The translations under genes were made by a program, and so were the position numbers. The notes beneath the pieces are model-generated. The model searched no databases and was not told where the DNA came from. It saw only the letters and a list, made by a program, of their open reading frames with translations. A DNA stretch of 64,000 nucleotides, from the IMG/VR virus record IMGVR_UViG_3300028177_000001, positions 62,001-126,000 of that record; one strand, written 5' to 3'. The first letter of the stretch is position 1; each line of letters starts with the position of its first letter. Below, piece after piece: positions 822 to 55,753 of this stretch.

Positions 822-836
822 ATAGGGGAGCCACCG
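822..836 (-). promoter_or_regulatory. Putative late promoter CGGT-N8-TAT
   Basis: cggt ggctcccc tat upstream of the ATG at 794. Confidence 0.65.
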
Positions 837-842
837 TCAGGG

Positions 843-1163
843 CTACTTCTTGACGGCTTCCTTCTCTGCAGGCTTCTCGGCTTCCTTCTCTGCAGGCTTC
901 TCGGCTTCCTTCTCTGCCCGCTTGGTCTCGGCTTCCATGGCCTGAGCGATGCGTTCGTGCTGCTCATCAGCTTCGGCGACGAACTTGTCCACGGCGGGCT
1001 TGTCGTTGTCGAGATCCTGGGTGGGGCGGGATCCGGGAAGCCATGGGATGTCCTGGCCTGCGTTGTCCAGGTTGTCGAAAGTCAGAGTAGGCTGACTACG
1101 AACAGGCCCCAGCATCCAGTTCTGGATGCTGTCGATGGGCACCGACCACTGCTTGACACTCAC
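843..1163 (-). CDS. Hypothetical protein with C-terminal (EKEAEKPA)n repeats
   Basis: 106-aa ORF in the co-directional gene run, GTG start with GGGAG RBS. Confidence 0.6.
   Translation of the reverse strand: MSVKQWSVPIDSIQNWMLGPVRSQPTLTFDNLDNAGQDIPWLPGSRPTQDLDNDKPAVDKFVAEADEQHERIAQAMEAETKRAEKEAEKPAEKEAEKPAEKEAVKK
854..917. repeat. 24-bp tandem repeat (~2.7 copies), coding for AEKEAEKP
   Basis: Unit cggcttccttctctgcaggcttct at 854 and 878, partial copy at 902. Confidence 0.9.
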
Positions 1164-1238
1164 CCAGGCTCCCGAAAAGGACTATGAGAGTCCGACAATC
1201 CCGGTGCACAGGATGTGGGTGGTGGGAGGTTGGTCTAC

Positions 1239-4079
1239 TCAAGTGTTGGGGTAGGACATTCGGTAGATGTCCCCTTCGGCCGTGATGTCAGCCCCGATCT
1301 CGAGAGCTGATCCGTTGAGCCGAAACTCTTTGTAAAGAGTAGGGTTCGCAGGGCCGACGTTATCAAGATCGTTTACTCCGTTCCGCGATAGGGTGATCAT
1401 TCCGATCAAAGCACTATTTGTATCGGGAGTCGCGGAAAGAGCCACGGAAGACACGGTGCCGTTCCATGTGAAGTCTGCCGAGGCAAACACATCCAACGTG
1501 ACTCCGGAAAGCAAGGCCCCCGAACTCGCGGCGGAGATGTTGATGGGCGAACCCCCAGTCGCTCCAAACTCATGGACAAAGTAGAGATCTCCCAGGACCG
1601 ATCCGCCGGTGCCGTCACCCACATACAGGGTTCCCGCGCCCGCTTCGAAGGCGGTCGGCGGAGAGTTGGTCTGGATGATGTACGTGGGGTCCAGGGGACC
1701 GGGGACCGTGAGCTTGCCTGTGACTGCGTTGTAGATCATGGGGTTAGGAGCGTTCGCCCCGAACGTGATCTCGTTCGCCGCAGAGACAGTGACTTCCATG
1801 ACGGAAGGGTAGGTGCCCTGCGTCATAGTCTGACCGGCGAACACTCCCAGCGCTGTATCCAGGCCGGTGTCCGCGCTCAGGAAGAACACCTCCGACATCG
1901 GCCCGTGGGAAACAGCGGTGAGTAGGATGACCCCTCCCCCTGCGTCAGTCGCGACCACGTACCGAGTTGCATTGAACTTGGCCAGGACTGCGACCAGATT
2001 GTCAGCTGCGTCTACACTGACCTGAAAGCCTCCCATGTCCGTAGCGAACCGGGCCACTCCCGTGACCCCTCCCACGAAGACTCCAGCGGCCTGCACCGAA
2101 GCTGGAGTGCCGTCCTGAGCGCGCACCAGGAAGATAGAGCCTACCGAGCCTCCCGCAGAATCTCCCGGTGCCAGGTAGAGGTTGCCTCCGTCGCCGCCCG
2201 CTCCGTCGGTGCCTCGACCCGCTTGCAGGAAGATCGATGCCGAGTCCACAGGGCTGAGTAGGGAATCCCCACCGCGCACCACCACGTTGCCTACACGGCT
2301 TCCTCCGTCGGCGGACTTCGTTCCGACTCGGAGGTTGTAGTTGCGGTATCCGGGGGTCCCAGTTGAGTCACCCAGGATCAGAGCCGAGGCCCCCAGCGCT
2401 CCGTCGTTGGGCCAGATCTCCCTTCCCAGAAGGAACTGCGGTCCGTTCCCGTAAGGGTTCGGGTCCAGAGTCATCTCAGGCTTGGTGATTGCCCCTACCT
2501 GGATCAAGCCGACTACGTTCAAGCCGCCGTTGGTGTTTGCCGGGGGGATCGGGTCCGAGGGCGAAGAAGCATCAACAATCTGTACAGCTCCCTGATCGGC
2601 CACGATAGTGCGCCCGCCGCCCGAGGCAGGGGTCCCCGCGTCGTAGGCTTCGTCCAGGGTGGTGACCGCTGTGGCAAGTCCCCAGACCTCGTCAAGTGCG
2701 TCCTGCACATTGACTGCTGTCATGCCGGTCACGGCGTTGTTGAAGAAGACGGTACTGGAGGGCACCGTTGCCGACAAGGTGGTGGGGGACCCTCCGGGGA
2801 AACTCAATGTCCCGTGGTCCACCGCCCCCAGCGAGAGAGAAGTCGTCCCAGTGACGCCCGTCTTATCGAAGACCAGGCCGTCCAGCACACACCACCGAAT
2901 AGTGGCCGCCACGTTCCCGGTCACTGCTGCGCCAGCGGGGTTGAACGCTACGTCGGAAGAAGAGGCTCCGCTAACAGCGGTGTAGTCCATTGTGAAGGTC
3001 GTGGCGTCGGACCAGATCCCGTAGGTGCCTCCCACTTCAAAGACTGAGTCCCGGATGCTTACAGTGGAGCCTGCTACAGCATAGAGACCTCGGACCGAAA
3101 AGTGGGAGTCCCAGATGTCGGCCGTGGTGCCCGCCCCGACCTGCAAGGAAAGGCTGGCCGCCGAAGCTGCTACATTCGAGAGCAGGTGGCAGTTGCGGAG
3201 CTCAAGACTTCCTGTCCCAGCCGTGATAATCGCAGGTCCCTGGGGGCTTCCCGACCCGGACGCGATCAAAGAGCAGCCGACTACCTTGAGGGCTCCCGCT
3301 CCAGTCTGGCTAAGGACTGCGTTCGCGCTGGCGTCAAGCCTCGCGAAGTACAGGTTGGACAGGACCAGGGTGTCGCCGCTTAGAGGCAGAACAGCGGTGT
3401 GTGTTGCAGAGGAGTTGCGGATCCGAACGACCTTAGTCAGCTCCCCGCCAGGCCAGCCGAACACGTGGACGTAGGGCTTGAAAACAAGGTCTTCGGTGTA
3501 CGTTCCTGGGCGGACGAGGACTACCCAGGGCAAGGCCGTCGAAGGGCTCTGCGCTTGAGCGTAGTCGACGGCTGCCTGGATGGTGGTGTAGTCTCCTTGG
3601 GCGGCATCCACGTAGAGCAACCGACCCGTCGACCCGGTTGTCTTGATAAGACCCAGGATAGCGAGCAGGTTGTCATTTTGATCGTCAGCCCAGCCCGCAG
3701 GGGTGATGTCAACCGGAACCGGCACGGGGCCGACAGCTTCTCCGGCGGGAACAAGCTTGACCCCGCCGACTGCGGTGAGAGCCCTCAGACGTACGAACTG
3801 TTCGGTGGTGCCTGTTCCGTCGGTGTACGAGAGCCGAACCAGGTAGGGTCCTTCCTTGTCTACTGTGAAGGAGCCTGGGCTCTGAGCCACGGCAGACCCG
3901 GAGAAGGCAGCGACACTTCCGGACGGCGAAAACGCAATGGACCATGCGTATGCGGTCCCCGCGTTGACGGAGTTTAGAAGGACGACATCGTTGACTTCGA
4001 GGTCGTCACGGCTGGCGCCGATGACACTACCTTTCGGTGTGGGTGCAGTGACGGAGCTGTCAATCGAAGCGGTGGCCAT
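1239..4079 (-). CDS. Tail fibre/spike-like virion protein: PKD-like N-terminal anchor, pectin-lyase-like beta-helix, Gly-rich region
   Basis: GDYTTIQAAVDYA...VLVRPGTYTEDL is a typical beta-helix start. The protein is G/A/S/T rich and its N-terminal domain is paralogous to 4127..4915. Confidence 0.7.
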   Translation of the reverse strand: MATASIDSSVTAPTPKGSVIGASRDDLEVNDVVLLNSVNAGTAYAWSIAFSPSGSVAAFSGSAVAQSPGSFTVDKEGPYLVRLSYTDGTGTTEQFVRLRALTAVGGVKLVPAGEAVGPVPVPVDITPAGWADDQNDNLLAILGLIKTTGSTGRLLYVDAAQGDYTTIQAAVDYAQAQSPSTALPWVVLVRPGTYTEDLVFKPYVHVFGWPGGELTKVVRIRNSSATHTAVLPLSGDTLVLSNLYFARLDASANAVLSQTGAGALKVVGCSLIASGSGSPQGPAIITAGTGSLELRNCHLLSNVAASAASLSLQVGAGTTADIWDSHFSVRGLYAVAGSTVSIRDSVFEVGGTYGIWSDATTFTMDYTAVSGASSSDVAFNPAGAAVTGNVAATIRWCVLDGLVFDKTGVTGTTSLSLGAVDHGTLSFPGGSPTTLSATVPSSTVFFNNAVTGMTAVNVQDALDEVWGLATAVTTLDEAYDAGTPASGGGRTIVADQGAVQIVDASSPSDPIPPANTNGGLNVVGLIQVGAITKPEMTLDPNPYGNGPQFLLGREIWPNDGALGASALILGDSTGTPGYRNYNLRVGTKSADGGSRVGNVVVRGGDSLLSPVDSASIFLQAGRGTDGAGGDGGNLYLAPGDSAGGSVGSIFLVRAQDGTPASVQAAGVFVGGVTGVARFATDMGGFQVSVDAADNLVAVLAKFNATRYVVATDAGGGVILLTAVSHGPMSEVFFLSADTGLDTALGVFAGQTMTQGTYPSVMEVTVSAANEITFGANAPNPMIYNAVTGKLTVPGPLDPTYIIQTNSPPTAFEAGAGTLYVGDGTGGSVLGDLYFVHEFGATGGSPINISAASSGALLSGVTLDVFASADFTWNGTVSSVALSATPDTNSALIGMITLSRNGVNDLDNVGPANPTLYKEFRLNGSALEIGADITAEGDIYRMSYPNT

Positions 4080-4102
4080 ACGAGTCCCGCCCTATCGGTG
4101 AA

Positions 4103-4117
4103 ATAGTGGTGTCACCA
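4103..4117 (-). promoter_or_regulatory. Putative late promoter (TGGT variant)
   Basis: tggt gacaccac tat upstream of 4079. Confidence 0.55.
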
Positions 4118-4126
4118 CAAGCATGG

Positions 4127-4915
4127 TCAAACCTCGAACAGGAGTTCGATGTAGATTCCAGAACCCGTGAACGCAGGGTTGTCCGAGGTCAAGGTGATAG
4201 TCCACTTCCCCAGAGCTGCAAAGGCGAGGTCCGCAGCGGTAGCTGAGAGCGTCAGATTGGTGACTGTGTCCGCCACCAGGGTGTTCATGTCGAAGGGGCT
4301 ACTGACGAGAACTGTGTTCCCGGTGGCCACGTTCTGAACAGTGAGGTCGTACGCACCAGCCGCGTTGATGACCGTCATGTAGGCTCGGACACCCACAAGC
4401 GTAGAAGTCTCGGACACCCAGCCTCGGTACGAGACTGACCCGGCAGCGACCGGGGCCATATTGAGGTGGTACGGAACCCGGTAGGTCGTGGCTGCTTCGA
4501 GCGCCTTCAGGTTTGCGTTCTGCTCGTTCGCCCAGCCCTCGGTGTCTACGTCAACCGGAATGATGCCGGTTCCGTCGCGACGCTCCCCTGCAGCTACCAG
4601 CTTGAGACCCAGGTCCGTAGTGAGGGCACGGAGACGGACGTACTGAGTACTCTCCGTTGAGAGCCCCGCGTCTACAATCAGTCGGACCAGGTACGCGCCC
4701 GTCACATCGATTGTGAAGGAGCCTGGGCTGACAGCAGTGGTGGAACCGGAGAAGGTCGCTGAAGAACCCTCAGGGACGAACACCAGGGTCCAGGCGTAGG
4801 TCGTCGCCGCGTCCAGGGCCGAAACCAGCACGACATCCGTGGCAACCAAGTCATCCCGACTGCCGTCATCAATGGGAGTGATCCCGTTGCGCAGACTACG
4901 AATGCTTGCAGCCAT
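4127..4915 (-). CDS. Virion appendage protein sharing its N-terminal domain with the 946-aa fibre
   Basis: SRDDL...YAW...SPGSFT.D..G.YLVRL...QYVRLRALT...PVD....GWA..QN.NL is present in both proteins. Confidence 0.7.
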   Translation of the reverse strand: MAASIRSLRNGITPIDDGSRDDLVATDVVLVSALDAATTYAWTLVFVPEGSSATFSGSTTAVSPGSFTIDVTGAYLVRLIVDAGLSTESTQYVRLRALTTDLGLKLVAAGERRDGTGIIPVDVDTEGWANEQNANLKALEAATTYRVPYHLNMAPVAAGSVSYRGWVSETSTLVGVRAYMTVINAAGAYDLTVQNVATGNTVLVSSPFDMNTLVADTVTNLTLSATAADLAFAALGKWTITLTSDNPAFTGSGIYIELLFEV

Positions 4916-4942
4916 TTGGAGACCTCCGCCCTCGAAACGGAG

Positions 4943-4957
4943 ATAGGCGAGAAACTG
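4943..4957 (-). promoter_or_regulatory. Putative late promoter (CAGT variant)
   Basis: cagt ttctcgcc tat upstream of 4915. Confidence 0.5.
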
Positions 4958-5416: not shown

Positions 5417-5451
5417 TGGAACCCTGCTCGGCCAGGCCGAACAGGGTTCCA
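5417..5451. terminator. Intrinsic terminator hairpin between the capsid gene and the convergent plus-strand gene
   Basis: Inverted repeat tggaaccctgctcggcc-a-ggccgaacagggttcca, followed by TTTT on the minus strand. A second hairpin ctcctcagg/cctgaggag lies at 5462-5483. Confidence 0.75.
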
Positions 5452-5489: not shown

Positions 5490-6362
5490 CTACCGAGCGA
5501 TGGTCAGACGGGCGAGGCCCTTGGGGTTGAATGCCCCCAGACCGATGTTCTCGAAGCAGCTGAAGCCGATGGTGCGAGCCTTCGGGTCATCGGCGGAGAG
5601 CACGGTCAGCTCGGTGCGGACGGGAATCCGACCGAACATCTCGGGCTCGCAGCAGATGTACACGGTGCCCACGGGGACCAGACGGGAGACGATGATGCTC
5701 GCGCCCCAGATGGTGCCCATGAGGCCGGTCTTCAGCAGGTCACGCTGCGTCTCGATGTCCAGGATGTCGCGACCGAACTTGCGCAGGTCAGCGTAGTCCC
5801 GAGCGTTCATGAAGACGCGGGCGACCCGAAGGTCGTGGCGCTCCACGAGCGAGAAGGCGTCAGCGAGGACGGCACCCGAGATGGGGGCCACGACGGCGGT
5901 GTCGGCGTTCTCGCCACCGGCGATGCTGTCGAACCCGTTGGTCGCGATGCTGTCGAGGACGGCGAAGACACGCTCGTCTTCCGCTGCCTGGATCTGAGCC
6001 CGTGCCAGGTCCTGGGCGCGCTCGATCAGGTCGAACCGGCGCTCCTTGATCTGGGTCAGGGGGATCTCGGGGTTCGAGGCGATCTCGAACAGCGGGAAGA
6101 TGACCCGGCGCGGCTTGGTGATGGCGAGGATGTTCTCGCCTTCCTCGCCGACCACGTAGGCCGTGACGTCGGGGTCCTTGTCGTAGATGGGCAGGGCGCC
6201 ATCGGGAAGCTGCTCGACCAGGAAGGTCTTGCGACCCACTGCCATGTAGTCGCGGCGCATGCGCAGCGGCTGGGTCATGGAAGCGGCGAGCTTGTGACGA
6301 CCCGCCTGTGTGCCGATGAACTCACTGATGAGCTTGGCCTTCACGTCGTTGGATACGGACAT
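5490..6362 (-). CDS. Major capsid protein (HK97-fold)
   Basis: 290 aa, located after protease, scaffold and decoration genes. Shows E-loop/spine-helix pattern (YVVGEEG, DLIERAQDLARAQIQAAED, GTIWGASIIVS), strong codon bias and a downstream terminator. Confidence 0.85.
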   Translation of the reverse strand: MSVSNDVKAKLISEFIGTQAGRHKLAASMTQPLRMRRDYMAVGRKTFLVEQLPDGALPIYDKDPDVTAYVVGEEGENILAITKPRRVIFPLFEIASNPEIPLTQIKERRFDLIERAQDLARAQIQAAEDERVFAVLDSIATNGFDSIAGGENADTAVVAPISGAVLADAFSLVERHDLRVARVFMNARDYADLRKFGRDILDIETQRDLLKTGLMGTIWGASIIVSRLVPVGTVYICCEPEMFGRIPVRTELTVLSADDPKARTIGFSCFENIGLGAFNPKGLARLTIAR

Positions 6363-6373: not shown

Positions 6374-7048
6374 TCAGACGCGCTGGTCGAAGACGATCTC
6401 GGACTGCGTCGAGTCCGAGGGCATCTTGAGCAGGCCCAGAATGGTGACGCCGCCAGCGGCAGCAGGAACGGAGTTGGTGTTCTCGAGGAACCCACCAGCC
6501 GTGTAGTCAGCTCCTGCGGAGTCGACCATCGGGTACAAGTACCCGTTGTCCGACGCACCCAGAGGCATGCCCGTGGTGTAGGTCAGGTCGTCAGCAGCGG
6601 TGTAGGCTGCAGCGGTGACCAGAGCCTGCGTCTCGAAGAGCTGCGAGGCGTAGGTGCCCTGCCCGGAGACGTAGGGGCTCTTGTTGCTCGCGACGGCAGG
6701 CTGGTTCTCGAAGGAGTTCCCGGCTGCAGTGTTGATGAACATGCCCAGGGGACGGGTCAGGATCGCCTGCAGAGCAGTGATCCCGGAAGCCGCGACAGTG
6801 ACGGGACCGCCGATGTCGTTGCTACCCGAGTCGGGGCGGGAGAAGGCGACGGAGCCGCTCAGGCAGCCGAGGACAGTCGTGTCCACGTTGGTGCTGATGA
6901 GCGTCGTCGTCGTACGGATGGGGGGGTTGGTCTGGGTGAAGGCATCGGCCGACAGAGTTCCCACCGAGTTCCGCACACCAACGTGCAGAATCCGGAGCGC
7001 ACTCGAAGACTCCAACCATCCACCACTCGCCTGTCCAAGCAGAGGCAT
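6374..7048 (-). CDS. Capsid decoration/cement protein
   Basis: Directly upstream of the capsid gene with its own late motif. Beta-rich, and paralogous to 29878..30447. Confidence 0.6.
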   Translation of the reverse strand: MPLLGQASGGWLESSSALRILHVGVRNSVGTLSADAFTQTNPPIRTTTTLISTNVDTTVLGCLSGSVAFSRPDSGSNDIGGPVTVAASGITALQAILTRPLGMFINTAAGNSFENQPAVASNKSPYVSGQGTYASQLFETQALVTAAAYTAADDLTYTTGMPLGASDNGYLYPMVDSAGADYTAGGFLENTNSVPAAAGGVTILGLLKMPSDSTQSEIVFDQRV

Positions 7049-7145
7049 TTTGCTCTCCTCATTGTTTACAGCTGAGAGATGAACTGGGGCTGAGGGCAGA
7101 TTTGCCGTCCAGCCAGACCTTTACGATCTACCTTCCCTCCCCGGT

Positions 7146-7160
7146 ATAAAGAGGGTATTG
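7146..7160 (-). promoter_or_regulatory. Putative late promoter (CAAT variant) for decoration and capsid genes
   Basis: caat accctctt tat. Confidence 0.6.
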
Positions 7161-8424: not shown

Positions 8425-9930
8425 TCAGAGAGGGGGTGTCGGGTTGTTGTAGCCTTCCCAGAGGGAAAGCAGAGTGCCGACCCGGACAACAACCCGGAGT
8501 TCGGCAAGACTAAGATCTCTACCAAGGACCCGAGCGCACTTGCGCACGTAGCTCTGCTCTGAGCTGGAGCCCTTGATTCCGCCGTGTGCAAGCACGGCGC
8601 GGTACACTCGGGGGTCAACACGAACCCCGAACGTCTTGTTGGTGGCGGCGCACCCCTCTACGAGAGCGGCGTCCGAAGAGGCGACTCGCACCAGGTTCTT
8701 CAGGGTGCTGTTGTAGCGAGCCCCTGCCTCCCGGTTCATCTGGCTGCGATGCGCCTGCGAAGAAAGAGTAGGGGCTGGGCGAACCGAGACCCGAGCTTCC
8801 TTGTTGAGAGTGTCGTTGGGACCGTCGGAGGGAGCAATAGCCTTCGCGACTTCCTTCTCTCGCATCTCTTGTTCCAGGCGCTTCCGAACCCGGTCCTTGA
8901 CCCGGTCGTAGACCTCATCCTCGAGATCCTTGAAGGGCGGAGCTGCGGTCTCTGCGGCAGGGGCTTCTCCGCCCTCTTCCTTTTCGTCGTCCCCGCCGAA
9001 CTCAAAGGCGACCCGGCTGCGGGACTGACCCACCACCCCCATAGACGCAGCCTTTGCGATCGCAGAGTCGGACCAGGAAGGGCGGGGAGTGGAGAGGATC
9101 CTGCGGATCTCAGATTCCTGAGCTGCGACATCGCCCGTGCTCAGGATGTTACGCATCACCGCTCCGGTGAAGGCGGGGACCGCGACCCAGCTGGCCTCGA
9201 TGAAGTGCACACCACCCGTCTCGTCGTGGTCCACATGCCCGCAGAGCTCGGCAATAACACGGGTCTGACTGTTGTCGTCAATGAAGGTGTTCAGCTTCGC
9301 CGTCTTGACGTGATCGCAGAGGTCTGTCTCGTCGACGGCGTAGTGGCCGCACTTCGTACAGATTGTGAAGTCGGTGGTGCAGCCCATGGAGAGCGTGCCC
9401 ATCTTCTTCGAGCGGATGTCCGCGATCAGGCCTGTGTGCTTCAGGGAAGTGGCGACCAGGATATCGACGTAGACCGAATCTCCGATATCGCGAGCGACCG
9501 CATCGATGATGCGACCCTTCGACTTCTCCTCTACCTGCACGTGCTCCTGGAAGTTGTGGCCTCCGACGAAGGTCGGGTAGCTGGCCAGAAGCACCTGGCG
9601 AGACCAGGAGTCACCGTTGTTGTTGACGTACTGGGAGCTTTCGGGCTTGATGTGGTAGTCGGTGTAGCGGCGATCCACCGTGGCGGAGCCGACCTTGATC
9701 TTGCCCGGCTCAGCACCCGCGACCTTGTCGACGTCCACTGACGCCACAATGGTGCAATGAGTGAACAGCCACTGGTCCGGGTCCAGGGACCCACCCAGAA
9801 TCTCACGAGCCTGGTCGGAGAGGTTCTGCGTCGAAGCCCCTGAGGCGGCAACCCGACGAACACCGTCCCACCCGCGTCCCGTCACGCGGGGGTGTGTGAC
9901 CATGGCATTGGCTGTCTTGAGGTGTCCCAT
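8425..9930 (-). CDS. Prohead (maturation) protease, HK97/herpes-like serine protease with Cys-rich insert
   Basis: NNNGDSW, NFQEH..GRIIDA, LSMGC..CTKCG..CDH and FIEASWVAVPAF.GA motifs, plus synteny. Confidence 0.8.
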   Translation of the reverse strand: MGHLKTANAMVTHPRVTGRGWDGVRRVAASGASTQNLSDQAREILGGSLDPDQWLFTHCTIVASVDVDKVAGAEPGKIKVGSATVDRRYTDYHIKPESSQYVNNNGDSWSRQVLLASYPTFVGGHNFQEHVQVEEKSKGRIIDAVARDIGDSVYVDILVATSLKHTGLIADIRSKKMGTLSMGCTTDFTICTKCGHYAVDETDLCDHVKTAKLNTFIDDNSQTRVIAELCGHVDHDETGGVHFIEASWVAVPAFTGAVMRNILSTGDVAAQESEIRRILSTPRPSWSDSAIAKAASMGVVGQSRSRVAFEFGGDDEKEEGGEAPAAETAAPPFKDLEDEVYDRVKDRVRKRLEQEMREKEVAKAIAPSDGPNDTLNKEARVSVRPAPTLSSQAHRSQMNREAGARYNSTLKNLVRVASSDAALVEGCAATNKTFGVRVDPRVYRAVLAHGGIKGSSSEQSYVRKCARVLGRDLSLAELRVVVRVGTLLSLWEGYNNPTPPL

Positions 9931-9931
9931 G

Positions 9932-11682: not shown

Positions 11683-11749
11683 TGAAGTACTCCTGAAGAA
11701 GGAAAAGCTTGAGCGGGGCGGCAGGGCCGACACACTATCGGTGTTGTGT

Positions 11750-11764
11750 ATAAAGGAGTTACCG
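11750..11764 (-). promoter_or_regulatory. Putative late promoter
   Basis: cggt aactcctt tat upstream of the core-protease-scaffold operon. Confidence 0.7.
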
Positions 11765-23312: not shown

Positions 23313-24249
23313 GGTTCTTCTCCAGATAGCGGGAGGCTACTCGCTCGGAACTGACAGAAGCCAGCCGATAGCGAGACAGGCCCACATCTGCCTTAGTTGT
23401 AGTCCGGTGCAAGTCCCAGGCCAGGCTCGCCAGCTCGTCCGCTTCCTGCACCAGGGTGTCGAAGAAGCGGGGGCTGTCCTCGAAACTGAAGTCCTGCTCG
23501 GCTTCTTCAGCGTTGATCTTCATGGACCGCACTCGCCCCTGAAGGTTCTGTACTCGGTGCGAGAGGTTGTTCAACGCAGTCTGGGCATCCAGAAGGGATC
23601 GCTGGAGAGGCCGGTGCTTGACGCGGGCTGTCTTTCCCTGTGGGGAATCCTCGTCCAACTCGTCTTCCTGGTCTTCCGCCCAGCCCTCGGGGTCTTCCTT
23701 GATGGCCTCGGCGTCCTCCACGATCTCCTTGACCTCTTCCCTGTCGCGGGAGTCCAGGGTGTCCTCGGCCGGATCCCAGTGAGGCGCATTGAGCTCGTCG
23801 TGAACGGTGTCTCCGATCGCCGACAGGGCCTCGATGCTGTTCATCAACTGGCGTCTCATGTCCGTGATCTTCTGAATGTACCCCTTCCCGCCGAGGTTGC
23901 CGTCCGGGCTCACGTTCCTGCTCTTGATCTTGACGAACCGGGCGTGCGCCGAGGTTGCGTGGCCCAGGGCCATCAAGGTGGAGCGAAGGACCTGCGCAAG
24001 AGGCTTCAGGTGCCGAGCATTGAACAAGAAGTTGTCGTGGATCTCGCGCTCCGAAGGTCCCGGAGTGTTCCAGGCCCACTCGCCTTTGTCGCCGCCCCGG
24101 TCCTTGATGAACCGGACTTCGCCAGCGGTCTTCACCTGGCCTGCATGCTTCTGCCGGGCGAAGCGAACGGCGACACGCTGAGGGTTCGGGGTAGACATGG
24201 GGCAGAGCTCCTCTGGTGTAGACGCACCCATAGGGTCTCTACCGCTCAT
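23305..24249 (-). CDS. Putative head protein with tags at both ends (start may be 24198)
   Basis: RVAVRF near the N-terminus and RVASRY at the C-terminus. Confidence 0.6.
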   Translation of the reverse strand: MSGRDPMGASTPEELCPMSTPNPQRVAVRFARQKHAGQVKTAGEVRFIKDRGGDKGEWAWNTPGPSEREIHDNFLFNARHLKPLAQVLRSTLMALGHATSAHARFVKIKSRNVSPDGNLGGKGYIQKITDMRRQLMNSIEALSAIGDTVHDELNAPHWDPAEDTLDSRDREEVKEIVEDAEAIKEDPEGWAEDQEDELDEDSPQGKTARVKHRPLQRSLLDAQTALNNLSHRVQNLQGRVRSMKINAEEAEQDFSFEDSPRFFDTLVQEADELASLAWDLHRTTTKADVGLSRYRLASVSSERVASRYLEKNHE

Positions 24250-24904: not shown

Positions 24905-24919
24905 ATAGGCCGATCACCG
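24905..24919 (-). promoter_or_regulatory. Putative late promoter
   Basis: cggt gatcggcc tat upstream of the operon containing the cargo polyproteins. Confidence 0.65.
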
Positions 24920-27795: not shown

Positions 27796-27810
27796 ATAGC
27801 GTCAGTACCG
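27796..27810 (-). promoter_or_regulatory. Putative late promoter
   Basis: cggt actgacgc tat. Confidence 0.65.
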
Positions 27811-34001: not shown

Positions 34002-34025
34002 AGTATCCTCTACCCGGAGGGGAGG

Positions 34026-34040
34026 ATAGGCTCTGTACCG
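34026..34040 (-). promoter_or_regulatory. Putative late promoter
   Basis: cggt acagagcc tat upstream of the terminase-portal operon. Confidence 0.65.
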
Positions 34041-38246: not shown

Positions 38247-38261
38247 ATAGTAGACCTACCG
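38247..38261 (-). promoter_or_regulatory. Putative late promoter
   Basis: cggt aggtctac tat. Confidence 0.7.
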
Positions 38262-40301: not shown

Positions 40302-40338
40302 GTCGAAGAGACTCCGTAGACGGTAGCTCTACCGTGGG

Positions 40339-40353
40339 ATAGTAGACCTACCG
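40339..40353 (-). promoter_or_regulatory. Putative late promoter (identical to the 38247 copy)
   Basis: cggt aggtctac tat. Confidence 0.7.
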
Positions 40354-47122: not shown

Positions 47123-47220
47123 GAGAGATCCTGTTCTTGCCTGAGCAAGGGGCTCAGTGAGGTACAAGCGCCGAAGATTTGACCACCGGGCACACCGGGG
47201 AATACTCTTGGGCTGGATCT

Positions 47221-47235
47221 ATAAACAGGACACCG
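47221..47235 (-). promoter_or_regulatory. Putative late promoter for the sheath gene
   Basis: cggt gtcctgtt tat. Confidence 0.7.
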
Positions 47236-51148: not shown

Positions 51149-52481
51149 CGTCGAGCTCTCGGATCCAGGAGGCCATGGTGACCTCGAAGCGGTTCAACGT
51201 AGAGAGCTCTGCGCCGCCAGGCTGGTCCGCGATCTCATCAGGCGTCGGAGGAGCCTTCAGAGCGTCCTGCACCGTCTCGGCTACAGGTAGGTCCAGGTTG
51301 TCCTCGTGCGCGGCGTCCTCGGCCACCTCGACGCTGTTGCTGACGGCCGAGGAGTCGGCGAACTCCCGCACTTCCCGCTTTTCAGGGTTGTCGAAGAAGT
51401 GGCCCTCGGCTGACGGGGCGCCAGAGCCGTAGTGTGGCGTGGGCATCTTCGAGGAGCGGACTTCATGGAAGTAGCTCTTCCCACCGTCCGGATGGATGAC
51501 GAACCCGTCCCGCCCCTCCCTGTGCATGCGAGCGACTTGGCGCTTCACCTGGCCCCAGTTTCGCACAGCCATCTCTTCTGTGTCGAGGACCCCATCAACC
51601 CGCGTGAAGCCCTTGACGACGTATTGGCCTGCGGCCCAGCGAGGATAGGGAGCTGGGCCCTTGTAGGGGCCGTCGTTGTTGGCAAGGGCTTCCTGGACGG
51701 CCCTCTCCAGCTTGGGCTTGGCCCAGGCCAAGAGCTTATCGAGGTTCTCTGTGCTCTGGCCGCCCCACTTGTAGGACTTGTGCCCGTAGGACTTCGGCCG
51801 GGAGAGTTTGCTGAACACATACCAGCTACGATCGTCCCCTCCTCGTCCTACGTTCCCCAGGTAGCCGTAGGACAGATTTGCCTCTGGGTACTTCCTCTTC
51901 AACCGGTCCACCAAGACCGCCAACTCCCGATCCGGAGTGGTGGAGGCAGTCTTCCCCGAGGGCTCGGCCAGAACCTGCTGCAGGAGATAGGTGTTCTCCT
52001 CGTGGGCGTTGGCGGCGGACATCAGCCAGTCATCCAGGCCCAGGGTCATTGCACCGATCTTCTTGATGCGGTCGTAGCCCGCCTTGATGGCGTCCTGGAG
52101 AGTGCTCTCCGAAAGAAGGCCGCGCTCATGCCGACAGGGCACCTGTTCCCAGTACTCGCAGAACCCCGTGATGTGCGGAAGCTGCGGACCCATGTCCACC
52201 GCGTCACGCCCCAGGTAGCCGACCATCTTCTCGGCGAGCTGGTCGATCTGCCCCTGGACCGAGTTGTAGAGTCTCTCGAACAGAAGGTGGTTCCCGTAGA
52301 AGGACGACCCCAGAGCTTGCCAGTGACTCACCTGATAGGAGAGACTCTGGGCCCGAAGAACGCAGAGCACCTCCAGCAGACAGAGGCGAACCTCCTCCCG
52401 CTGCATGGGAGTTGCGCTCAGGTACGCCTGCTTCTCGCGGGGGTCTACGGTCACCGGTTCTACTCCTGCCACTCCAGCCAT
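51129..52481 (-). CDS. Dps/ferritin-like domain fused to additional small domains
   Basis: SHWQALGSSFYGNHLLFERLY..IDQLAE matches the Dps ferroxidase signature. Confidence 0.7.
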   Translation of the reverse strand: MAGVAGVEPVTVDPREKQAYLSATPMQREEVRLCLLEVLCVLRAQSLSYQVSHWQALGSSFYGNHLLFERLYNSVQGQIDQLAEKMVGYLGRDAVDMGPQLPHITGFCEYWEQVPCRHERGLLSESTLQDAIKAGYDRIKKIGAMTLGLDDWLMSAANAHEENTYLLQQVLAEPSGKTASTTPDRELAVLVDRLKRKYPEANLSYGYLGNVGRGGDDRSWYVFSKLSRPKSYGHKSYKWGGQSTENLDKLLAWAKPKLERAVQEALANNDGPYKGPAPYPRWAAGQYVVKGFTRVDGVLDTEEMAVRNWGQVKRQVARMHREGRDGFVIHPDGGKSYFHEVRSSKMPTPHYGSGAPSAEGHFFDNPEKREVREFADSSAVSNSVEVAEDAAHEDNLDLPVAETVQDALKAPPTPDEIADQPGGAELSTLNRFEVTMASWIRELDDAPVAT

Positions 52482-54916
52482 TCGCTGACCGAGCTGGGGG
52501 TTGCGAAGCGAGAGCCTCTGGCAGCCAGGGATCCGGGGATGGCCCAGCTGTCGTTGTCTACCAGGACCACCTTGCCCCGGTTCTCCAGGCGCTGGAGCTC
52601 CTTGATAAGGGCATCGAGGTCCGACTGGGTGGGCTCGTCGGCTGAGATCTCGCGGAACACTTCCTCGGTGGTCAGCGGCTTGCGGGACCGGTTCTCCTGA
52701 AGGACGTACAGCAGGGCATGGCCCGCGACCTTCTGAGCCACCGTGTCCTGCATCTCGGAGTTGTCCTCCTGAGTGAAGTGGCCCTTCGGAGCACCGTCGC
52801 CTTCCACGGGACCCTTCTTGGTCTCGCCGATTTCGTCCTCAGTGTCCTTGGCGAGCTTCGCGAGCTCATCGGTGGACTCAGAGAGATCCTTCTGGGTGAA
52901 GTGACCTGCGGGGGCACCGTCCCCCTCCAGGGCACCAGAGGTCGGCTCGCCGATCTCCTCGGCGTCGAAGTCGGCGGCCTTCTTGTCGCCGTCGTCCTTC
53001 TTGGAAGCGGCTTCCTCCTTCTTCTTCTCGCAGTTGTCGCGCATGCCCCCCTCGGGGAGCTTCTCGCAACCGGCTTCCTTGTTCTCTCCAGCCCTGCGTC
53101 GGCCAGTGAGCTCCCGGTACTTGCCCCAGGCGAAGGCGGGGACCAGGTGGCCCATGTCCGCATCCTCGGCCTCGTCCCTCATAGCCTCGAATCCTTCCAC
53201 CCAGCCCTTCTTGTAGCCGGGGTCGTTCTCGAACCGCTTGTTCCAGCGGCCCTGGTAGCCGTCAAGTGCGCCCTGGCGCACTCCGCCTGAAGCCAGCCTC
53301 CCCTCCAAACCCTTTCGCTTGACCATCCCGCTCTCTTCGAGCTCGCTGAACCTACCGTCAGGGTAAACCCCCACCACGATCAATCCCCGAGGGAGATCCT
53401 GGTAGGCCATCACGGGGCCGTCCTCATCCTCCATGCGAGAGAAGAACTCGACCAACTTCTTAGACCTGGGGTCGTAGCTCCACACCCCCGGCTTCACGCG
53501 GGCTGCGGACTTGCCCAGAGGCCCGTCCGGGTAGCAACCCAGGAGCAGCTTGCTGTAGGCACACTTGCCCTGCTTGGAGTGCTGTCCGAGGAAGCCCGTG
53601 ATCTTCGCATACCGAGCGGTCCGTCGGGTGTGGAGGTCGGAGGCGACCTCACCGGCAAAGGCTCGGAAGTCTGCGCACACGGTGAGACCGAGACGGGCAG
53701 TCTTGGCCGGGTGCCCGTACAGGCCCTTGGCCTGCTTCTCAGAAGCATGCCGCATGGACTTAGAAGCATCGTACTTCTGGCTGGCATCCGACACGAACTC
53801 CAAGCTGGGCCCCTCTTCCCGGAACTCTACGACAACGTACTCTGACCGCCCGTCGTGCCCACTGTCATAAACCCGACCTCCGTGGGTTTCGATGAGATCC
53901 TCGATTCCCCAGAGCTGCCTGGTCGAGGTGTACCGAACGGTGACCCTGAACGAGCGAGCAATCTTCTCCGAAGCAGCTTCCTTCGGGGTCTCGGAGGCCA
54001 CCTTGGGTCCGATCTCCTTCATCGCAGCCAGGAGAAGCTTCGCCGAGGAGGACCGAGCTCGCTTCGAGTGGGCGACCAGGAACGGGGCGACACCTGCGTC
54101 CTTCTTGTATGCAGTCTTCACCAGGGACAGGGCTCGCTTCTGGAGCTTGCGGACCGAAGCCTCGACATCGCTCTGGGTCTGCTTGGTGAAGCCGTACAGG
54201 CCAGACGCTGCCTCCCTCGTCCAGGAGAGACGAGCTCGCTGGGCGGCCATGATCTCTACAGGAAGAAGGGGGCCATCCTTGCTCATCATCGACTCTTCCA
54301 TCTCCTGCTTCAGCTTCTCAACTGCAGGGGGAGGGTTCTCGACGTTGTCCTGGAGTTCCTGGGGCAGGTCGCTGAGGGGAACACTCTCGCCCTGGGCAAA
54401 CATCGCCTCTTCGGCGAGCTCGTTCTGGAGCACCACGTCGTCGACGTAGGACGGGGTGGCCTTCTTCAGCTTGTTGCCCATCTTGTTGAAGCCCGCGTCG
54501 TCCGGGTGCTTGTCCCGGTTGGCGATGGACTGAGCCTGGGCGAGACTAACCGTGCCCTGGTACTCCCAGGCATCCTCTTCCCACCCGTCCAGGTTCAGGT
54601 AGTAGAGCTCGCCGCTCTTCCACCAGTAGTCATGCATTTCGTCGGCGGAATCAAGCTTCTGGAATCCCAGGCGTTCCCAGCCCCTGTCGTCCTCAGGCGG
54701 GAACCGCCCAGCTTGCTTGTGCTTGTCCTTGACTACGTCGCCGTACTCCTCGTTCATCTTCTGCCAGGAGTCCTGGGTCTCCTTGGGCTGGGTCTTCATC
54801 CAGGCCTCGAACTGCTTGCGTCCCTCAGGCCCCTCAAGGAAGCGGGCGTGGACACTGCGGAGCTCGGTTTCGAGAGCAGCCTGGCGAGCGATTTCGGAAG
54901 GAAGAAGCAGAAGCAT
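52460..54916 (-). CDS. Mosaic head protein with numerous [KR]xA linkers and internal duplications
   Basis: GLYG..HSK...KLLL x2 and EIGE...G..EGDGAP.GHFTQ x2. Preceded by the late motif. Confidence 0.6.
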   Translation of the reverse strand: MLLLLPSEIARQAALETELRSVHARFLEGPEGRKQFEAWMKTQPKETQDSWQKMNEEYGDVVKDKHKQAGRFPPEDDRGWERLGFQKLDSADEMHDYWWKSGELYYLNLDGWEEDAWEYQGTVSLAQAQSIANRDKHPDDAGFNKMGNKLKKATPSYVDDVVLQNELAEEAMFAQGESVPLSDLPQELQDNVENPPPAVEKLKQEMEESMMSKDGPLLPVEIMAAQRARLSWTREAASGLYGFTKQTQSDVEASVRKLQKRALSLVKTAYKKDAGVAPFLVAHSKRARSSSAKLLLAAMKEIGPKVASETPKEAASEKIARSFRVTVRYTSTRQLWGIEDLIETHGGRVYDSGHDGRSEYVVVEFREEGPSLEFVSDASQKYDASKSMRHASEKQAKGLYGHPAKTARLGLTVCADFRAFAGEVASDLHTRRTARYAKITGFLGQHSKQGKCAYSKLLLGCYPDGPLGKSAARVKPGVWSYDPRSKKLVEFFSRMEDEDGPVMAYQDLPRGLIVVGVYPDGRFSELEESGMVKRKGLEGRLASGGVRQGALDGYQGRWNKRFENDPGYKKGWVEGFEAMRDEAEDADMGHLVPAFAWGKYRELTGRRRAGENKEAGCEKLPEGGMRDNCEKKKEEAASKKDDGDKKAADFDAEEIGEPTSGALEGDGAPAGHFTQKDLSESTDELAKLAKDTEDEIGETKKGPVEGDGAPKGHFTQEDNSEMQDTVAQKVAGHALLYVLQENRSRKPLTTEEVFREISADEPTQSDLDALIKELQRLENRGKVVLVDNDSWAIPGSLAARGSRFATPSSVSEWLEWQE

Positions 54917-54943
54917 GGGGAATCTCCGGAAGCGAACTTCGGA

Positions 54944-54958
54944 ATAGGGAGGCTACCG
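54944..54958 (-). promoter_or_regulatory. Putative late promoter
   Basis: cggt agcctccc tat. Confidence 0.7.
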
Positions 54959-54960
54959 TA

Positions 54961-55389
54961 TTACAGCAGCACGTCGTAGCCGACAGTGCCTGTAACGGTA
55001 GCGCCTGCTTCGATGGTGAACCCAGTGGTGGTCTTGCTGATGACTCTGAAGGGAGCGAAGACATCCGAAACGAGGTGCACCCGGTAGGTGGTGCCAGACA
55101 GCGCGGTGGCGAAGGTAACAGTCTTGGAGGTCTCAGCCGTAAAGGTGAGGGTCCCGTTGACTGCGCTGGTGAGTGCCAAGAGGTCCTCCACTTGTGTCAG
55201 GGCAGAGGCAATATCAGCCACCACCGTCTGAGGGATCTCAGTGTACGGGCTGACCACCAGCCCGTAGGGGTCCTGAATGTCCCGGACCAGCAGGGTTCCT
55301 GCCTGGTTCTGCATCAGGGTGAACGTGTACAGGTCCGGGCTTGTTCCCGACCGGTACGTGAAATCAGCCTGGATCAGTGTGGCTGCCAT
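54961..55389 (-). CDS. Small virion protein
   Basis: C-terminal KTTTGFTI...TGTVGY is shared with 26209..27768. Confidence 0.6.
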   Translation of the reverse strand: MAATLIQADFTYRSGTSPDLYTFTLMQNQAGTLLVRDIQDPYGLVVSPYTEIPQTVVADIASALTQVEDLLALTSAVNGTLTFTAETSKTVTFATALSGTTYRVHLVSDVFAPFRVISKTTTGFTIEAGATVTGTVGYDVLL

Positions 55390-55392
55390 CAG

Positions 55393-55713
55393 CTACCAGA
55401 TCCCCGTGGTGTCGCAGCCCGTCTTGCTGAGCCACTTTTCCAGAGCTACGATCCCCTCTCGGTCTGTTGACCAGAGATCCATTCGCGGACCCTTCACGTC
55501 GATCCCCAGATCCGCAATGCGGTCTACGTTTGCGATGCGAGCGCGTCCGTCACGGAATGCCTTGAGGTAGCTCGGCAGGTTCCGAACCCCGAAGGAAATG
55601 TCGAGGACTGCAATCCGGTACTCCGGCCGAACACGTTCTTCCAGCCACTTTGCGGCGACGCGCTTGGCCATTGCCACACGTACCACGGAGGGCTTGGTTC
55701 GGTTCTGGGCCAT
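55393..55713 (-). CDS. Small late protein with N-terminal tag
   Basis: Start MAQNR after AGGAG. Carries PSVVRVAMAKRVAAKW. Confidence 0.6.
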   Translation of the reverse strand: MAQNRTKPSVVRVAMAKRVAAKWLEERVRPEYRIAVLDISFGVRNLPSYLKAFRDGRARIANVDRIADLGIDVKGPRMDLWSTDREGIVALEKWLSKTGCDTTGIW

Positions 55714-55738
55714 TGTATGCTCCTGGCTTCGGTGGAGC

Positions 55739-55753
55739 ATAGGTCAGATATTG
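55739..55753 (-). promoter_or_regulatory. Putative late promoter (CAAT variant) at the replication/late boundary
   Basis: caat atctgacc tat. Confidence 0.55.

What the first reader, a model, noticed from the sequence alone, without database searches (positions are those of the whole stretch)
822..55753. Fixed-spacing DNA motif CRRT-N8-TAT upstream of 13 late genes: phage-specific late promoter
Seen: on the minus strand, nearly every larger intergenic gap before a late/virion operon holds CGGT (9 copies), CAAT (2), CAGT (1) or TGGT (1). In each, exactly 8 nt follow and then TAT, always preceded by a pyrimidine. Sites are 822, 4103, 4943, 7146, 11750, 24905, 27796, 34026, 38247, 40339, 47221, 54944 and 55739. 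It is absent before the HD cassette, the endonuclease and the replication-region gap at 63.2 kb. It does not match sigma70 -35/-10 spacing, and although compact like sigma54 sites it lacks the GG-N10-GC consensus. Inference: a late promoter read by a phage-encoded or phage-modified RNA polymerase. It also independently marks the cargo enzymes as late genes.
Basis: partly seen in the sequence, partly recalled or inferred. Interest (0 to 1): 0.75.

Follow-up and report, generated by a model that had tools for sequence, protein, structure and literature searches.

The report
Conserved late promoter of jumbo phages
The fixed-spacing motif is real: it is the CGGTAG-N5-CTAT late-gene promoter shared by a large family of uncultured jumbo phages that have no RNA polymerase gene, and is probably read by host polymerase steered by a conserved phage protein pair encoded in this window.

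Summary
Observation confirmed and extended. All 13 sites are as described, and a 14th lies at 24230. The window is part of a 288-kb marine jumbo phage. Genome-wide, CGGT-N8-TAT occurs 45 times, 39 in the 12% of sequence that is intergenic. The 8-nt spacing is required. Sites point at the downstream gene on both strands, mostly 24-40 nt before the start codon.

The refined motif is CGGTAG-N5-CTAT, a near-palindrome (TAG/CTA), with nothing conserved around it. It recurs in related phages and sits at the same place before the scaffold/capsid operon in about 40 relatives, often directly after an intrinsic terminator. So it starts transcription.

It is a late promoter, but neither this genome nor a complete relative has a recognisable phage RNA polymerase. 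The one full sigma factor here is absent from the five relatives checked.

The best candidate reader is inferred, not shown. It is a family-conserved 201-aa protein with two sigma-region-4 helix-turn-helix domains (55761-56369). It lies next to a NusG/RfaH-like gene, the clamp loader and the sliding clamp.

No transcription start data exist. A second promoter class that differs between phages (GGGTTCCC-N13-GACGTAA here) drives replication genes.

The parts
822..836 (-). Class B promoter CGGTGGCTCCCCTAT, 27 nt before a 1792-aa gene that runs out of the window
4103..4117 (-). Class B variant TGGTGACACCACTAT, 23 nt before the 946-aa gene 1239-4079
4943..4957 (-). Class B variant CAGTTTCTCGCCTAT, 27 nt before gene 4127-4915; lies downstream of the capsid-gene terminator
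7146..7160 (-). Class B variant CAATACCCTCTTTAT before the scaffold-like gene (6374-7048) and major head protein (5490-6362); its position is conserved in about 40 relatives
11750..11764 (-). Class B promoter CGGTAACTCCTTTAT before the 10495-11733 / protease (8425-9930) operon; a terminator-like hairpin at 11840-11856 lies just upstream
24230..24244 (-).
24905..24919 (-). Class B promoter CGGTGATCGGCCTAT, 38 nt before gene 24273-24866
27796..27810 (-). Class B promoter CGGTACTGACGCTAT, 27 nt before gene 26209-27768; lies just after the portal gene
34026..34040 (-). Class B promoter CGGTACAGAGCCTAT heading the operon 33102-34001 ... large terminase (30451-32394) ... portal (27818-29527); a GGGTAG element follows it 9 nt before the ATG
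38247..38261 (-). Class B promoter CGGTAGGTCTACTAT before 37099-38232
40339..40353 (-). Class B promoter CGGTAGGTCTACTAT (same 15-mer as 38247) followed by a partial copy CGGTAGAGCTACC; heads gene 39828-40301, one of 8 paralogous cassettes
47221..47235 (-). Class B promoter CGGTGTCCTGTTTAT before the 1729-aa DUF2460-like (tail-related) gene 41933-47167
54944..54958 (-). Class B promoter CGGTAGCCTCCCTAT, 27 nt before the 818-aa gene 52460-54916
55739..55753 (-). Class B variant CAATATCTGACCTAT immediately after the stop codon of the tandem-HTH gene; a class B site has the same placement in relatives G001 and G003 (a TAG-N5-CTAT palindrome lies there in LR745208.1)
55761..56369 (-). Candidate reader: 201-aa protein with two sigma-region-4-type helix-turn-helix domains and no region 2
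56366..56911 (-). 180-aa NusG/RfaH/Spt5-like protein (NGN + KOW), co-conserved next to the tandem-HTH gene
56892..58259 (-). Clamp-loader ATPase (DNA pol III delta'/tau-like), conserved neighbour of the transcription-factor pair
61757..62914 (-). Sliding-clamp-like processivity factor (phrog_947) in the same replication block
5417..5451 (-). Strong intrinsic terminator (16-bp stem plus T run) right after the major head gene

Best explanation
The motif is the late-gene promoter of this jumbo phage and of a large uncultured family around it. Its refined form is CGGTAG-N5-CTAT, which holds two inverted TAG/CTA half-sites one helical turn apart.

Shown:
- It is an oriented, spacing-specific, intergenic signal.
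- It heads the virion-gene operons.
- It is conserved in sequence and position across relatives.
- It often directly follows a terminator, so transcription must start there.

Inferred:
- The phage has no polymerase of its own, so host RNA polymerase is redirected to these sites by phage factors made earlier from the replication block.
- The best candidate is the 201-aa protein at 55761-56369. It is a duplicated sigma-region-4 helix-turn-helix with very similar recognition helices (SQ..V.YR..R). It could read the two half-sites and dock on the beta-flap, the site where sigma region 4 normally sits.
- The adjacent NusG/RfaH-like protein may then make transcription processive through the long late operons.
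- The start site is predicted within about 1-12 nt downstream of TAT.
For: Enrichment, spacing and orientation:
-.
- Logo of 103 sites from three phages: only C-G-G-T-A-G-N5-C-T-A-T is conserved. The ribosome-binding signal starts 12-19 nt after TAT, leaving no room for a separate -10 element.

Gene content:
- Class B sits before the capsid, protease, portal/terminase and giant virion genes.
- The replication block at 160-190 kb has only the other class.

Conservation:
- TAR-N6-TAT intergenic/total is 52/67 in G001, 34/35 in G004 and 10/10 in G005. Other spacings are near zero in G000, G004 and G005, and lower and mostly genic in G001.
- G002 (38% GC) has AATAGTTTnTTTATa.
- About 40 relatives carry YRRTA-N7-NAT about 100-125 nt before the scaffold gene with a free spacer.
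- Roughly ten of them have a hairpin plus T-run terminator within a few nucleotides upstream of the motif.
- Back-to-back divergent pairs share the central CCGG.

No phage polymerase.

Candidate reader:
- Sigma70_r4 scores 46 bits against a cut-off of 24.
- It has two HTH domains (AF2 pLDDT 80, sigma4 TM 0.8-0.88).
- The two domains are an internal duplication.
- It is present in G000, G001, G002, G003 and G005, always beside the clamp loader, and in distant relatives.
- Its recognition helices are invariant in its clade.
- Its gene lies in the class-B-free replication block, and a class B site starts right after its stop codon in three phages.
- Tunturi_5 lacks a homolog and lacks the motif: 2 hits against 19 for the control.
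Against: - There are no transcription start data. No RNA-seq run holds this phage.
- No binding evidence exists. The protein-DNA prediction was not folded.
- The candidate has no sigma region 2, so how DNA is melted is unexplained. Host sigma or an unrecognised partner would be needed.
- LR745208.1 has a homolog (46% identity) but no clear enrichment of the motif.
- Distant relatives with a different first recognition helix lack TAR-N6-TAT. That fits covariation, but the sample is small.
- Class B also precedes small genes among the tRNA cluster at 250-272 kb, so 'late' is an association, not a measurement.
- My gene calls are home-made.
Confidence: 0.6

Rival explanations
1. The motif is an ops-like loading site, not a promoter. 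CGGTAG on the non-template strand would recruit the phage NusG/RfaH-like protein to polymerase that started further upstream. This would suppress termination and polarity across the long co-directional late operons.
For: - The E. coli RfaH ops element is GGCGGTAGCGTG. Its recognised core C3-G8 is CGGTAG, with G4, G5, A7 and G8 essential (PMC5995543).
- That core is identical to the 5' half of class B in G000, G001 and G004.
- A full-length NusG/RfaH-fold protein is encoded in the window and is co-conserved.
- The motif is on the sense strand in 5' leaders.
- 49 of the 50 genes lying wholly in the window are co-directional.
Against: - Roughly ten relatives have an intrinsic terminator within a few nucleotides upstream of the motif.
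- Back-to-back divergent pairs leave no room for upstream promoters.
- No promoter-like conservation is seen in the 20 nt upstream.
- The CGG part is not conserved across the family: CAATAG, CGCTAG, AATAG.
- A at the fifth position is only 64% in G000.
- The ops TG pause dinucleotide is absent.
- A 6-mer match could be chance.
Confidence: 0.12
2. The motif is read by an unrecognised phage-encoded RNA polymerase, for example one of the conserved giant proteins of unknown function. It would work like the 17-23-bp promoters of single-subunit or crAss/YonO-type phage polymerases.
For: - The motif is compact, information-rich and lacks a -35 element. CTAT near the predicted start recalls the T7/SP6 'CTATA'; site 4103, TGGTGACACCACTAT, resembles the SP6 promoter (from memory).
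- Several conserved proteins of 1000-1800 aa have no family match, e.g. a 1788-aa protein 32% identical between G000 and G002.
- The record is only 79% complete.
Against: - No PF00940, Rpb1 or Rpb2 hits in G000. The PF00940 control did not ring anywhere, so that one test is weak.
- No DxDGD, T7 motif A or C, or RpoN-box signatures in six-frame translations of G000; in the 100% complete G002 only one stray VHDSF (motif C) match and one DMDGD match, with no motif A beside them.
- A sigma4-type factor and a NusG paralog imply use of a multisubunit bacterial polymerase.
Confidence: 0.1
3. The motif is an operator for a dimeric regulator (repressor or activator) that overlaps ordinary host-type promoters, rather than the promoter core itself.
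For: - It has a near-palindromic TAG-N5-CTA core. Perfectly palindromic versions (AATAG-N5-CTATT) occur before the capsid operon and hit both strands.
- GGTAG resembles the GGGTAG element that sits 9-10 nt before about 12 apparently leaderless genes, which could be the true -10.
Against: - Strong orientation bias: CGG is always on the upstream side.
- There is no other conserved element between the motif and the ribosome-binding site.
- Sigma70-consensus promoters in the window are at chance level.
- The fifth-position A, which would be the -11 A, is dispensable in G000.
Confidence: 0.1
4. The motif is read by the phage's own full-length sigma70-family factor (334 aa, at 180.5 kb of the record).
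For: The genome encodes one sigma with regions 1.2, 2, 3 and 4. It lies in the block that lacks class B sites.
Against: - It is absent from five relatives that have the motif, including the complete G002, and no region 2 is found in G001-G003.
- Its region 4.2 (SRERVRQIQ) looks like that of primary sigmas, which predicts a TTGACA-type -35 at 17-bp spacing (from memory). Class B lacks this.
Confidence: 0.05

Closest known systems
Phage T4 late promoters (TATAAATA) read by host RNA polymerase with gp55, gp33 and the gp45 sliding clamp
   Same: - Tens of short, -35-less promoters sit in small gaps before virion genes.
- There is no phage polymerase.
- A small phage factor is related to part of sigma.
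- The factor genes lie beside the clamp and clamp loader.
- Iyer et al. 2021 (PMC7824862) describe 'minimal sigma' HTH factors and gp33 in T4-like jumbo phages.
   Different: - The motif sequence and architecture differ: a two-part CGGTAG-N5-CTAT instead of a single -10-like octamer.
- The factor is a tandem sigma-region-4 duplication, not a region-2-like gp55. No gp55 or gp33 homolog was detected.
- A NusG paralog is part of the module.
- Clamp dependence is untested.
- Iyer et al. state that the group-3 jumbo phages (which include the phage G-like subgroup 3.2) lack both polymerase subunits and sigma factors.
Sigma54 (-24/-12) promoters, TGGCAC-N5-TTGC
   Same: The length and geometry are the same: xGGxAx-N5-xTxx, with GG and the downstream dinucleotide 10 nt apart. 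There is no -35 element, and reading is by two DNA-binding modules of one factor.
   Different: The -12 dinucleotide is AT, not GC. No RpoN-box protein is found in the phage. The candidate reader is built from sigma70 region 4 modules. No AAA+ activator link is known.
RfaH ops element (GGCGGTAGCGTG) and NusG paralogs
   Same: The core CGGTAG is identical, lies on the sense strand, and sits in the leaders of long operons. A NusG/RfaH-fold protein is encoded next door.
   Different: - There is no TG pause.
- The CGG part varies across the family.
- Terminators lie directly upstream, and divergent pairs imply initiation at the motif.
- There are about 50 copies per genome rather than a few.
Lambdoid Q antiterminators acting at the late promoter
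   Same: A DNA-binding phage factor would act at a late promoter together with the elongation machinery. There are weak profile hits of the tandem-HTH protein to Q-like families (phrog_79 E 1.6e-4; Pfam Phage_antitermQ E 0.1).
   Different: There are many sites rather than one late promoter. The hits fall on the generic HTH and are far below family thresholds.

Membership tests
Sigma70-type promoter | -35 and -10 hexamers 16-18 bp apart | tested here: not met
   No conservation from -20 to -1 upstream of the motif in 39 and 103 sites. The consensus scan finds 0, 0 and 3 sites in 60 kb, which is chance level.
Sigma54-type promoter | GG-N10-GC at -24/-12 | tested here: not met
   The GG-N10 spacing is present, but the downstream dinucleotide is AT in nearly all sites.
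Sigma54-type promoter | A sigma54 (RpoN-box) factor is available | tested here: inconclusive
   No RRT..KYR signature in six frames of G000 or G002. The host is unknown, so host sigma54 cannot be excluded.
T7-like single-subunit polymerase promoter | A cognate T7-family RNA polymerase gene | tested here: not met
   PF00940 gave no candidates, although its control rang in no genome. Motif A (D.S.SG.Q) is absent from G000 and the complete G002; motif C ([VIL]HDS[FWY]) is absent from G000 and gives one isolated match in G002.
T7-like single-subunit polymerase promoter | A contiguous conserved block of about 17-23 bp from -17 to +6 | tested here: not met
   Only 10-11 positions are conserved. The 5-nt spacer and the downstream bases are free.
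T4-type late promoter system | A TATAAATA -10-like octamer | tested here: not met
   The motif is CGGTAG-N5-CTAT.
T4-type late promoter system | Phage factor(s) replacing sigma domains on host polymerase, linked to the sliding clamp | tested here: inconclusive
   A sigma4-type factor is encoded beside the clamp loader and clamp. No gp55- or gp33-like hit among 60-odd proteins scanned. The function is untested.
RfaH ops element | A GGCGGTAGnnTG core on the non-template strand | tested here: inconclusive
   CGGTAG is identical in G000, G001 and G004. The flanking GG and TG are absent, and the core varies in G002, G003, G005 and in capsid-operon sites.
RfaH ops element | Lies inside a transcribed leader downstream of a promoter | tested here: not met
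   Terminators lie immediately upstream in roughly ten relatives. There are overlapping divergent pairs. No upstream promoter signal is seen.
Sigma70-family sigma factor (for the 201-aa protein) | Region 2 (core binding and -10 melting) plus region 4 | tested here: not met
   Region 4 is met: PF04545 46.4 bits against a cut-off of 24.1, and fold TM 0.8-0.88 to sigma4 domains. There is no region 2; the second domain is another HTH.
NusG/Spt5 family (for the 180-aa protein) | An NGN domain followed by a KOW barrel | tested here: met
   AF2 pLDDT 86. Foldseek gives NusG at E 3.5e-9 over 180 columns and RfaH at 1.6e-6. The PDB profile gives NusG at E 2.4e-4 and Spt5 at 3e-6. KOW and NusG Pfam hits occur in homologs.

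The most novel reading that the evidence does not exclude
A previously undescribed way of re-programming bacterial RNA polymerase. A 'minimal sigma' made of two duplicated region-4 helix-turn-helix domains would read a near-palindromic, sigma54-like two-part promoter (TAG-N5-CTA). The upstream half (CGGTAG) would double as an ops-type loading site for a phage-encoded NusG/RfaH paralog, coupling initiation and antitermination at about 50 late promoters per genome. This would hold across a very large family of uncultured jumbo phages (more than 1000 protein clusters).
Probability: 0.25. Interest if true: 0.85.

Novelty: new variant of a known kind. Interest (0 to 1): 0.62.

Why it matters
This jumbo-phage lineage is common in metagenomes: more than 590 capsid relatives were found in IMG/VR. 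It is said to lack both polymerase and sigma genes, so how it times its genes is unknown.

A defined late promoter, plus a second promoter class that differs between phages, gives a sequence-only way to split these 200-500-kb genomes into temporal classes, to assign unknown genes to the virion/late programme, and to find operon boundaries.

The tandem region-4 protein and the NusG paralog are concrete candidates that can be expressed and tested. If confirmed, they would add a new type of sigma-like specificity factor and the first phage RfaH-like system.

Tried and rejected
- RNA evidence: no RNA run holds the phage. Metatranscriptomes from the same study share none of its words.
- Protein-DNA complex prediction of the tandem-HTH protein with a class B site was not folded by the tool, so it gives no evidence either way.
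- Nucleotide search of phage records found no near relative.
- Polymerase hunt: Pfam families on G000 and catalytic-motif regexes on both genomes were negative apart from stray motif matches in G002 and two short D-x-D-x-D matches in G000. PHROG scans of the eleven largest unknown proteins gave no polymerase or transcription-related family.
- The 9n9q 'RpoE' hit that spans both HTHs is weak (E 0.03, TM 0.28). It belongs to a dCas12f-sigmaE complex and was not pursued.
- Ortholog-by-ortholog promoter sharing between G000 and G002 was only marginal (3 shared, Fisher P 0.08), limited by my gene starts and pattern.
- Covariation between recognition helices and motif was only suggestive. Clades with another first helix lack TAR-N6-TAT but keep (G/T)GTAG in their gaps.
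- LR745208.1 showed no enrichment by a crude control.
- Whether TAT is at -12/-10 or at -4/-2 could not be settled from sequence. Leader lengths by analogy with class A favour the first; the GGGTAG leaderless genes favour the second.

Full report
**What the window is.** The window is bases 62,001-126,000 of a 288,255-bp IMG/VR virus record. The record is 62% GC and CheckV rates it 79% complete. It is held by marine metagenomes.

The window carries the following genes:
- major head protein, 5490-6362
- a prohead-protease-like gene, 8425-9930, and the portal, 27818-29527
- large terminase, 30451-32394
- a 2100-aa virion-type protein, 11840-18232
- a polyA/CCA-polymerase-HAD-2',5'-ligase fusion, 18229-20988
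- a 1729-aa DUF2460-like protein and an SNF2 helicase
- at the high-coordinate end, a replication block with clamp loader, primase-like gene and sliding clamp

By my own codon-usage gene calls, 49 of the 50 genes lying wholly in the window are on the minus strand.

All 13 sites are as described, and one more lies at 24230. CRRT-N8-TAT gives 16 hits against 4.9 +/- 2.5 in shuffles.

In the whole record CGGT-N8-TAT occurs 45 times against 11 for the reversed control. Thirty-nine are intergenic although only 12% of the sequence is (P about 6e-30). Spacings of 7 or 9 nt give 6 and 12 hits, mostly inside genes. Sites on the plus strand precede plus-strand genes. The distance from TAT to the start codon is mostly 24-40 nt.

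A logo of the 39 sites shows C-G-G-T-A-g-N5-C-T-A-T. A logo of 103 sites pooled from three related phages shows the same. Nothing is conserved in the 20 nt upstream. Nothing is conserved downstream until the Shine-Dalgarno signal, which begins 12-19 nt after TAT. The conserved core is a near-palindrome, TAG-N5-CTA.

**It is a family-wide element.** The capsid protein has more than 590 relatives in IMG/VR at 84-92% identity. In about 40 non-redundant relatives, a YRRTA-N7-NAT element lies about 100-125 nt before the scaffold gene that precedes the capsid gene. Its spacer varies freely.

In roughly ten of these (for example L034, L047, L070, L076, L081 and L084) a hairpin followed by a T run ends within a few nucleotides upstream of the element. 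Polymerase arriving from upstream is therefore released, and transcription must start anew at the motif. In the window itself, terminator-like hairpins lie after the capsid gene (5417-5451) and about 75 nt upstream of the site at 11750.

I fetched five large relatives in full. The TAR-N6-TAT counts, intergenic over total, are:

| Record | Count | Note |
|---|---|---|
| G001 | 52/67 | |
| G004 | 34/35 | |
| G005 | 10/10 | as CGCTAG-N5-CTAT |
| G003 | 14/28 | |

Neighbouring spacings give almost nothing in G000, G004 and G005, and fewer, mostly genic hits in G001. G002 is 38% GC, has terminal repeats and is 100% complete. Its equivalent is AATAGTTTnTTTATa, 20-50 nt before start codons. Back-to-back divergent pairs that share the central CCGG occur at 255880/255893 and 259106/259119 of the record.

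**Temporal class.** A second motif, aGGGTTCCC-N13-GACGTAA, has ECF-like -35/-10 spacing. It marks 34 intergenic sites, concentrated at 160-190 kb among replication and recombination genes. It has no intergenic site in the window. Class B (the motif under study) is absent from 150-190 kb.

Class A (this second motif) differs strongly between relatives:

| Record | Class A motif |
|---|---|
| G001 | GGGGGGTTCAACT...CCGTATAG |
| G004 | CCGTTAAAAC-N8-CTGCTTCCGTAAGTA |
| G003 | AATCGTGTAAT...CCGTTAC |
| G002 | CCCCC-N10-TTGATAAG |

Class B is conserved by contrast. So 'late' is well supported by association with the virion genes. Class B also precedes small, partly paralogous genes among the tRNA cluster at 250-272 kb.

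**Who reads it.** No phage RNA polymerase is visible:
- T7-type, beta and beta' families give nothing in this record. The T7 test lacked a positive control.
- Six-frame searches for catalytic signatures find none in this record; the complete G002 gives only one stray VHDSF and one DMDGD match, with no T7 motif A.
- The largest unknown proteins match no polymerase or transcription-related family.

The record encodes one full sigma70-family protein of 334 aa at 180.5 kb. Five relatives lack it, and three relatives checked (G001-G003), including complete G002, have no region 2 at all. It therefore cannot be the conserved reader.

The only transcription-type proteins I found shared across the family are two adjacent genes in the window.

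The first, 55761-56369, encodes 201 aa:
- It has a sigma region 4 domain at residues 44-97 (PF04545, 46 bits).
- A second, homologous helix-turn-helix lies at about 108-162.
- The two recognition helices share the pattern SQ..V.YR..R.
- The model has pLDDT 80. Only single sigma4 domains match it, at TM 0.8-0.88, and no known two-domain protein does.
- It has 1119 cluster representatives at E <= 1e-3. Its nearest ESM-Atlas clusters are almost all viral.

The second gene, 56366-56911, encodes a full-length NusG/RfaH/Spt5 fold.

Both genes lie directly downstream of the clamp loader in G000, G001 and G002; G003 and G005 have the tandem-HTH gene about 550 nt after the clamp loader, with no NusG homolog detected. 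Distant relatives keep the order clamp loader, NusG/KOW-like (in L179 and L181), tandem HTH. The pair sits in the class-B-free replication block. A class B site begins right after the HTH gene's stop codon in G000, G001 and G003; in LR745208.1 a TAG-N5-CTAT palindrome sits there.

Tunturiibacter phage Tunturi_5 has 49% capsid identity and no detectable homolog. It has 2 TAG-N5-CTAT sites against 19 for the control.

**Mechanism proposed.** Host polymerase is redirected to class B sites by the tandem region-4 protein. Two similar recognition helices would read two inverted TAG/CTA half-sites one helical turn apart. Region 4 is the sigma domain that docks on the beta flap (established knowledge of sigma structure). 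The NusG paralog may then ride with the polymerase through the long late operons. All of this is inference.

**Open points.**
- It is unknown how the DNA is melted without a region 2.
- The start site is unknown. If TAT is the -12/-10 part, leaders are as short as those predicted for class A. If CGGTAG is the -10-like part, TAT lies at -4/-2. The second reading is suggested by about 12 genes with GGGTAG 9-10 nt before an ATG that lacks a ribosome-binding site.

**A striking coincidence.** The E. coli RfaH recruitment element ops is GGCGGTAGCGTG. Its recognised core, C3-G8, is CGGTAG (PMC5995543). This equals the 5' half of class B in G000, G001 and G004.

An ops-only reading would need a promoter upstream. 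Three things argue against it: the terminators directly upstream of the motif in relatives, the divergent pairs, and the variability of CGG across the family. A dual role, promoter plus loading site, is not excluded.

**Comparison with known systems.** The system works most like T4 late transcription: many short promoters without a -35 element, no phage polymerase, sigma-fragment-like factors, and linkage to the clamp genes. It fails the defining features of the T4, sigma70, sigma54, T7 and ops families as listed in the membership table.

Iyer et al. 2021 state that the group-3 jumbo phages, which include the phage G-like subgroup 3.2, have neither polymerase subunits nor sigma factors (PMC7824862). 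I found no transcription study of this family.

**Verdict.** The motif is a real, conserved late promoter of a new sequence type. The reading machinery is unproven, but there is a specific, testable candidate.

Noticed in passing
G000 record 14-31 kb and 160-262 kb (outside the window; e.g. L015, L016): A second promoter class, aGGGTTCCC-N13-GACGTAA, with ECF-like spacing. It has 34 intergenic copies before replication genes and a tRNA gene. Each relative has its own long version, which suggests a fast-evolving factor/promoter pair whose reader was not identified.
   Followed up: partly
Window 34011-34015 (GGGTA just before the ATG of gene 33102-34001); G000 22288, 31320, 34629, 45097, 52144, 55306, 158092, 201836, 248810, 257738, 279245: GGGTAG lies exactly 9-10 nt before about 12 start codons that lack a Shine-Dalgarno sequence. 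This looks like leaderless genes with a TAGnnT-type -10, possibly the host-type (early) promoter class.
   Followed up: partly
L022:997-2001 (G000 180502-181506, minus strand): A full-length sigma70-family gene with regions 1.2, 2, 3 and 4 and a primary-sigma-like region 4.2. It is present in this phage but absent from five relatives, so it is probably a recent acquisition. Its promoters are unknown.
   Followed up: partly
Window 6374-7160, and L023-L102 upstream of the scaffold gene: A conserved small hairpin, CCC-TGTAAACA-GGGAGCA, lies about 20-35 nt before the scaffold-gene ATG in most relatives. In the window it reads CAGCTGTAAACAATGAGGAG. It may be a 5'-UTR regulatory or processing element of the capsid operon.
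   Followed up: no
G000 51760-51812 (L011), and window 40320-40353: Three exact tandem copies of CGGTAGAGCTACTAT at a 19-nt period, plus a partial copy (CGGTAGAGCTACC). The same partial copy follows the site at 40339. The arms GTAG..CTAC are palindromic.
   Followed up: no
Window 39828-40301, and G000 47893, 51272, 52164, 217936, 255940, 257088, 272847: Eight small genes share a 29-38-aa N-terminal stretch at 31-94% identity, each with its own class B promoter. They look like mobile or duplicated promoter-plus-gene-start cassettes, several lying antisense among the tRNA genes.
   Followed up: partly
G000 244-273 kb (L019-L021): About 40 tRNA genes, all on the minus strand, including three tRNA-Met, plus a tRNA-like gene with an odd anticodon at L010:2066-2142 downstream of a class A promoter.
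   Followed up: no
Window 18229-20988 (-): A fusion of a polyA/CCA-type nucleotidyltransferase, a HAD phosphatase of the 'Swiss Army Knife RNA repair' type and a 2',5'-RNA-ligase-like domain. It is encoded inside a virion-gene run between a 775-aa unknown protein and the 2100-aa virion protein.
   Followed up: no
Window 40348-41856 (-): A 502-aa protein with a ROS/MucR zinc-finger DNA-binding domain near the N-terminus and weak HNH or homing-endonuclease hits near the C-terminus. No class B site lies in front of it, but GGGTAGGGT does.
   Followed up: no
Window 59585-60301 (-): A weak match (E 0.0012, below threshold) of residues 176-227 to the C-terminal domain of the RNA polymerase alpha subunit, in the replication block near the transcription-factor pair.
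   Followed up: no
L176:2240-2330 (Tunturiibacter phage Tunturi_5, upstream of its capsid operon): The cultured distant relative has a different repeated element (AAATCACAGTGAACGnAAAACCAACTACG, twice) where this family has class B. It may be that phage's own late promoter or operator.
   Followed up: no
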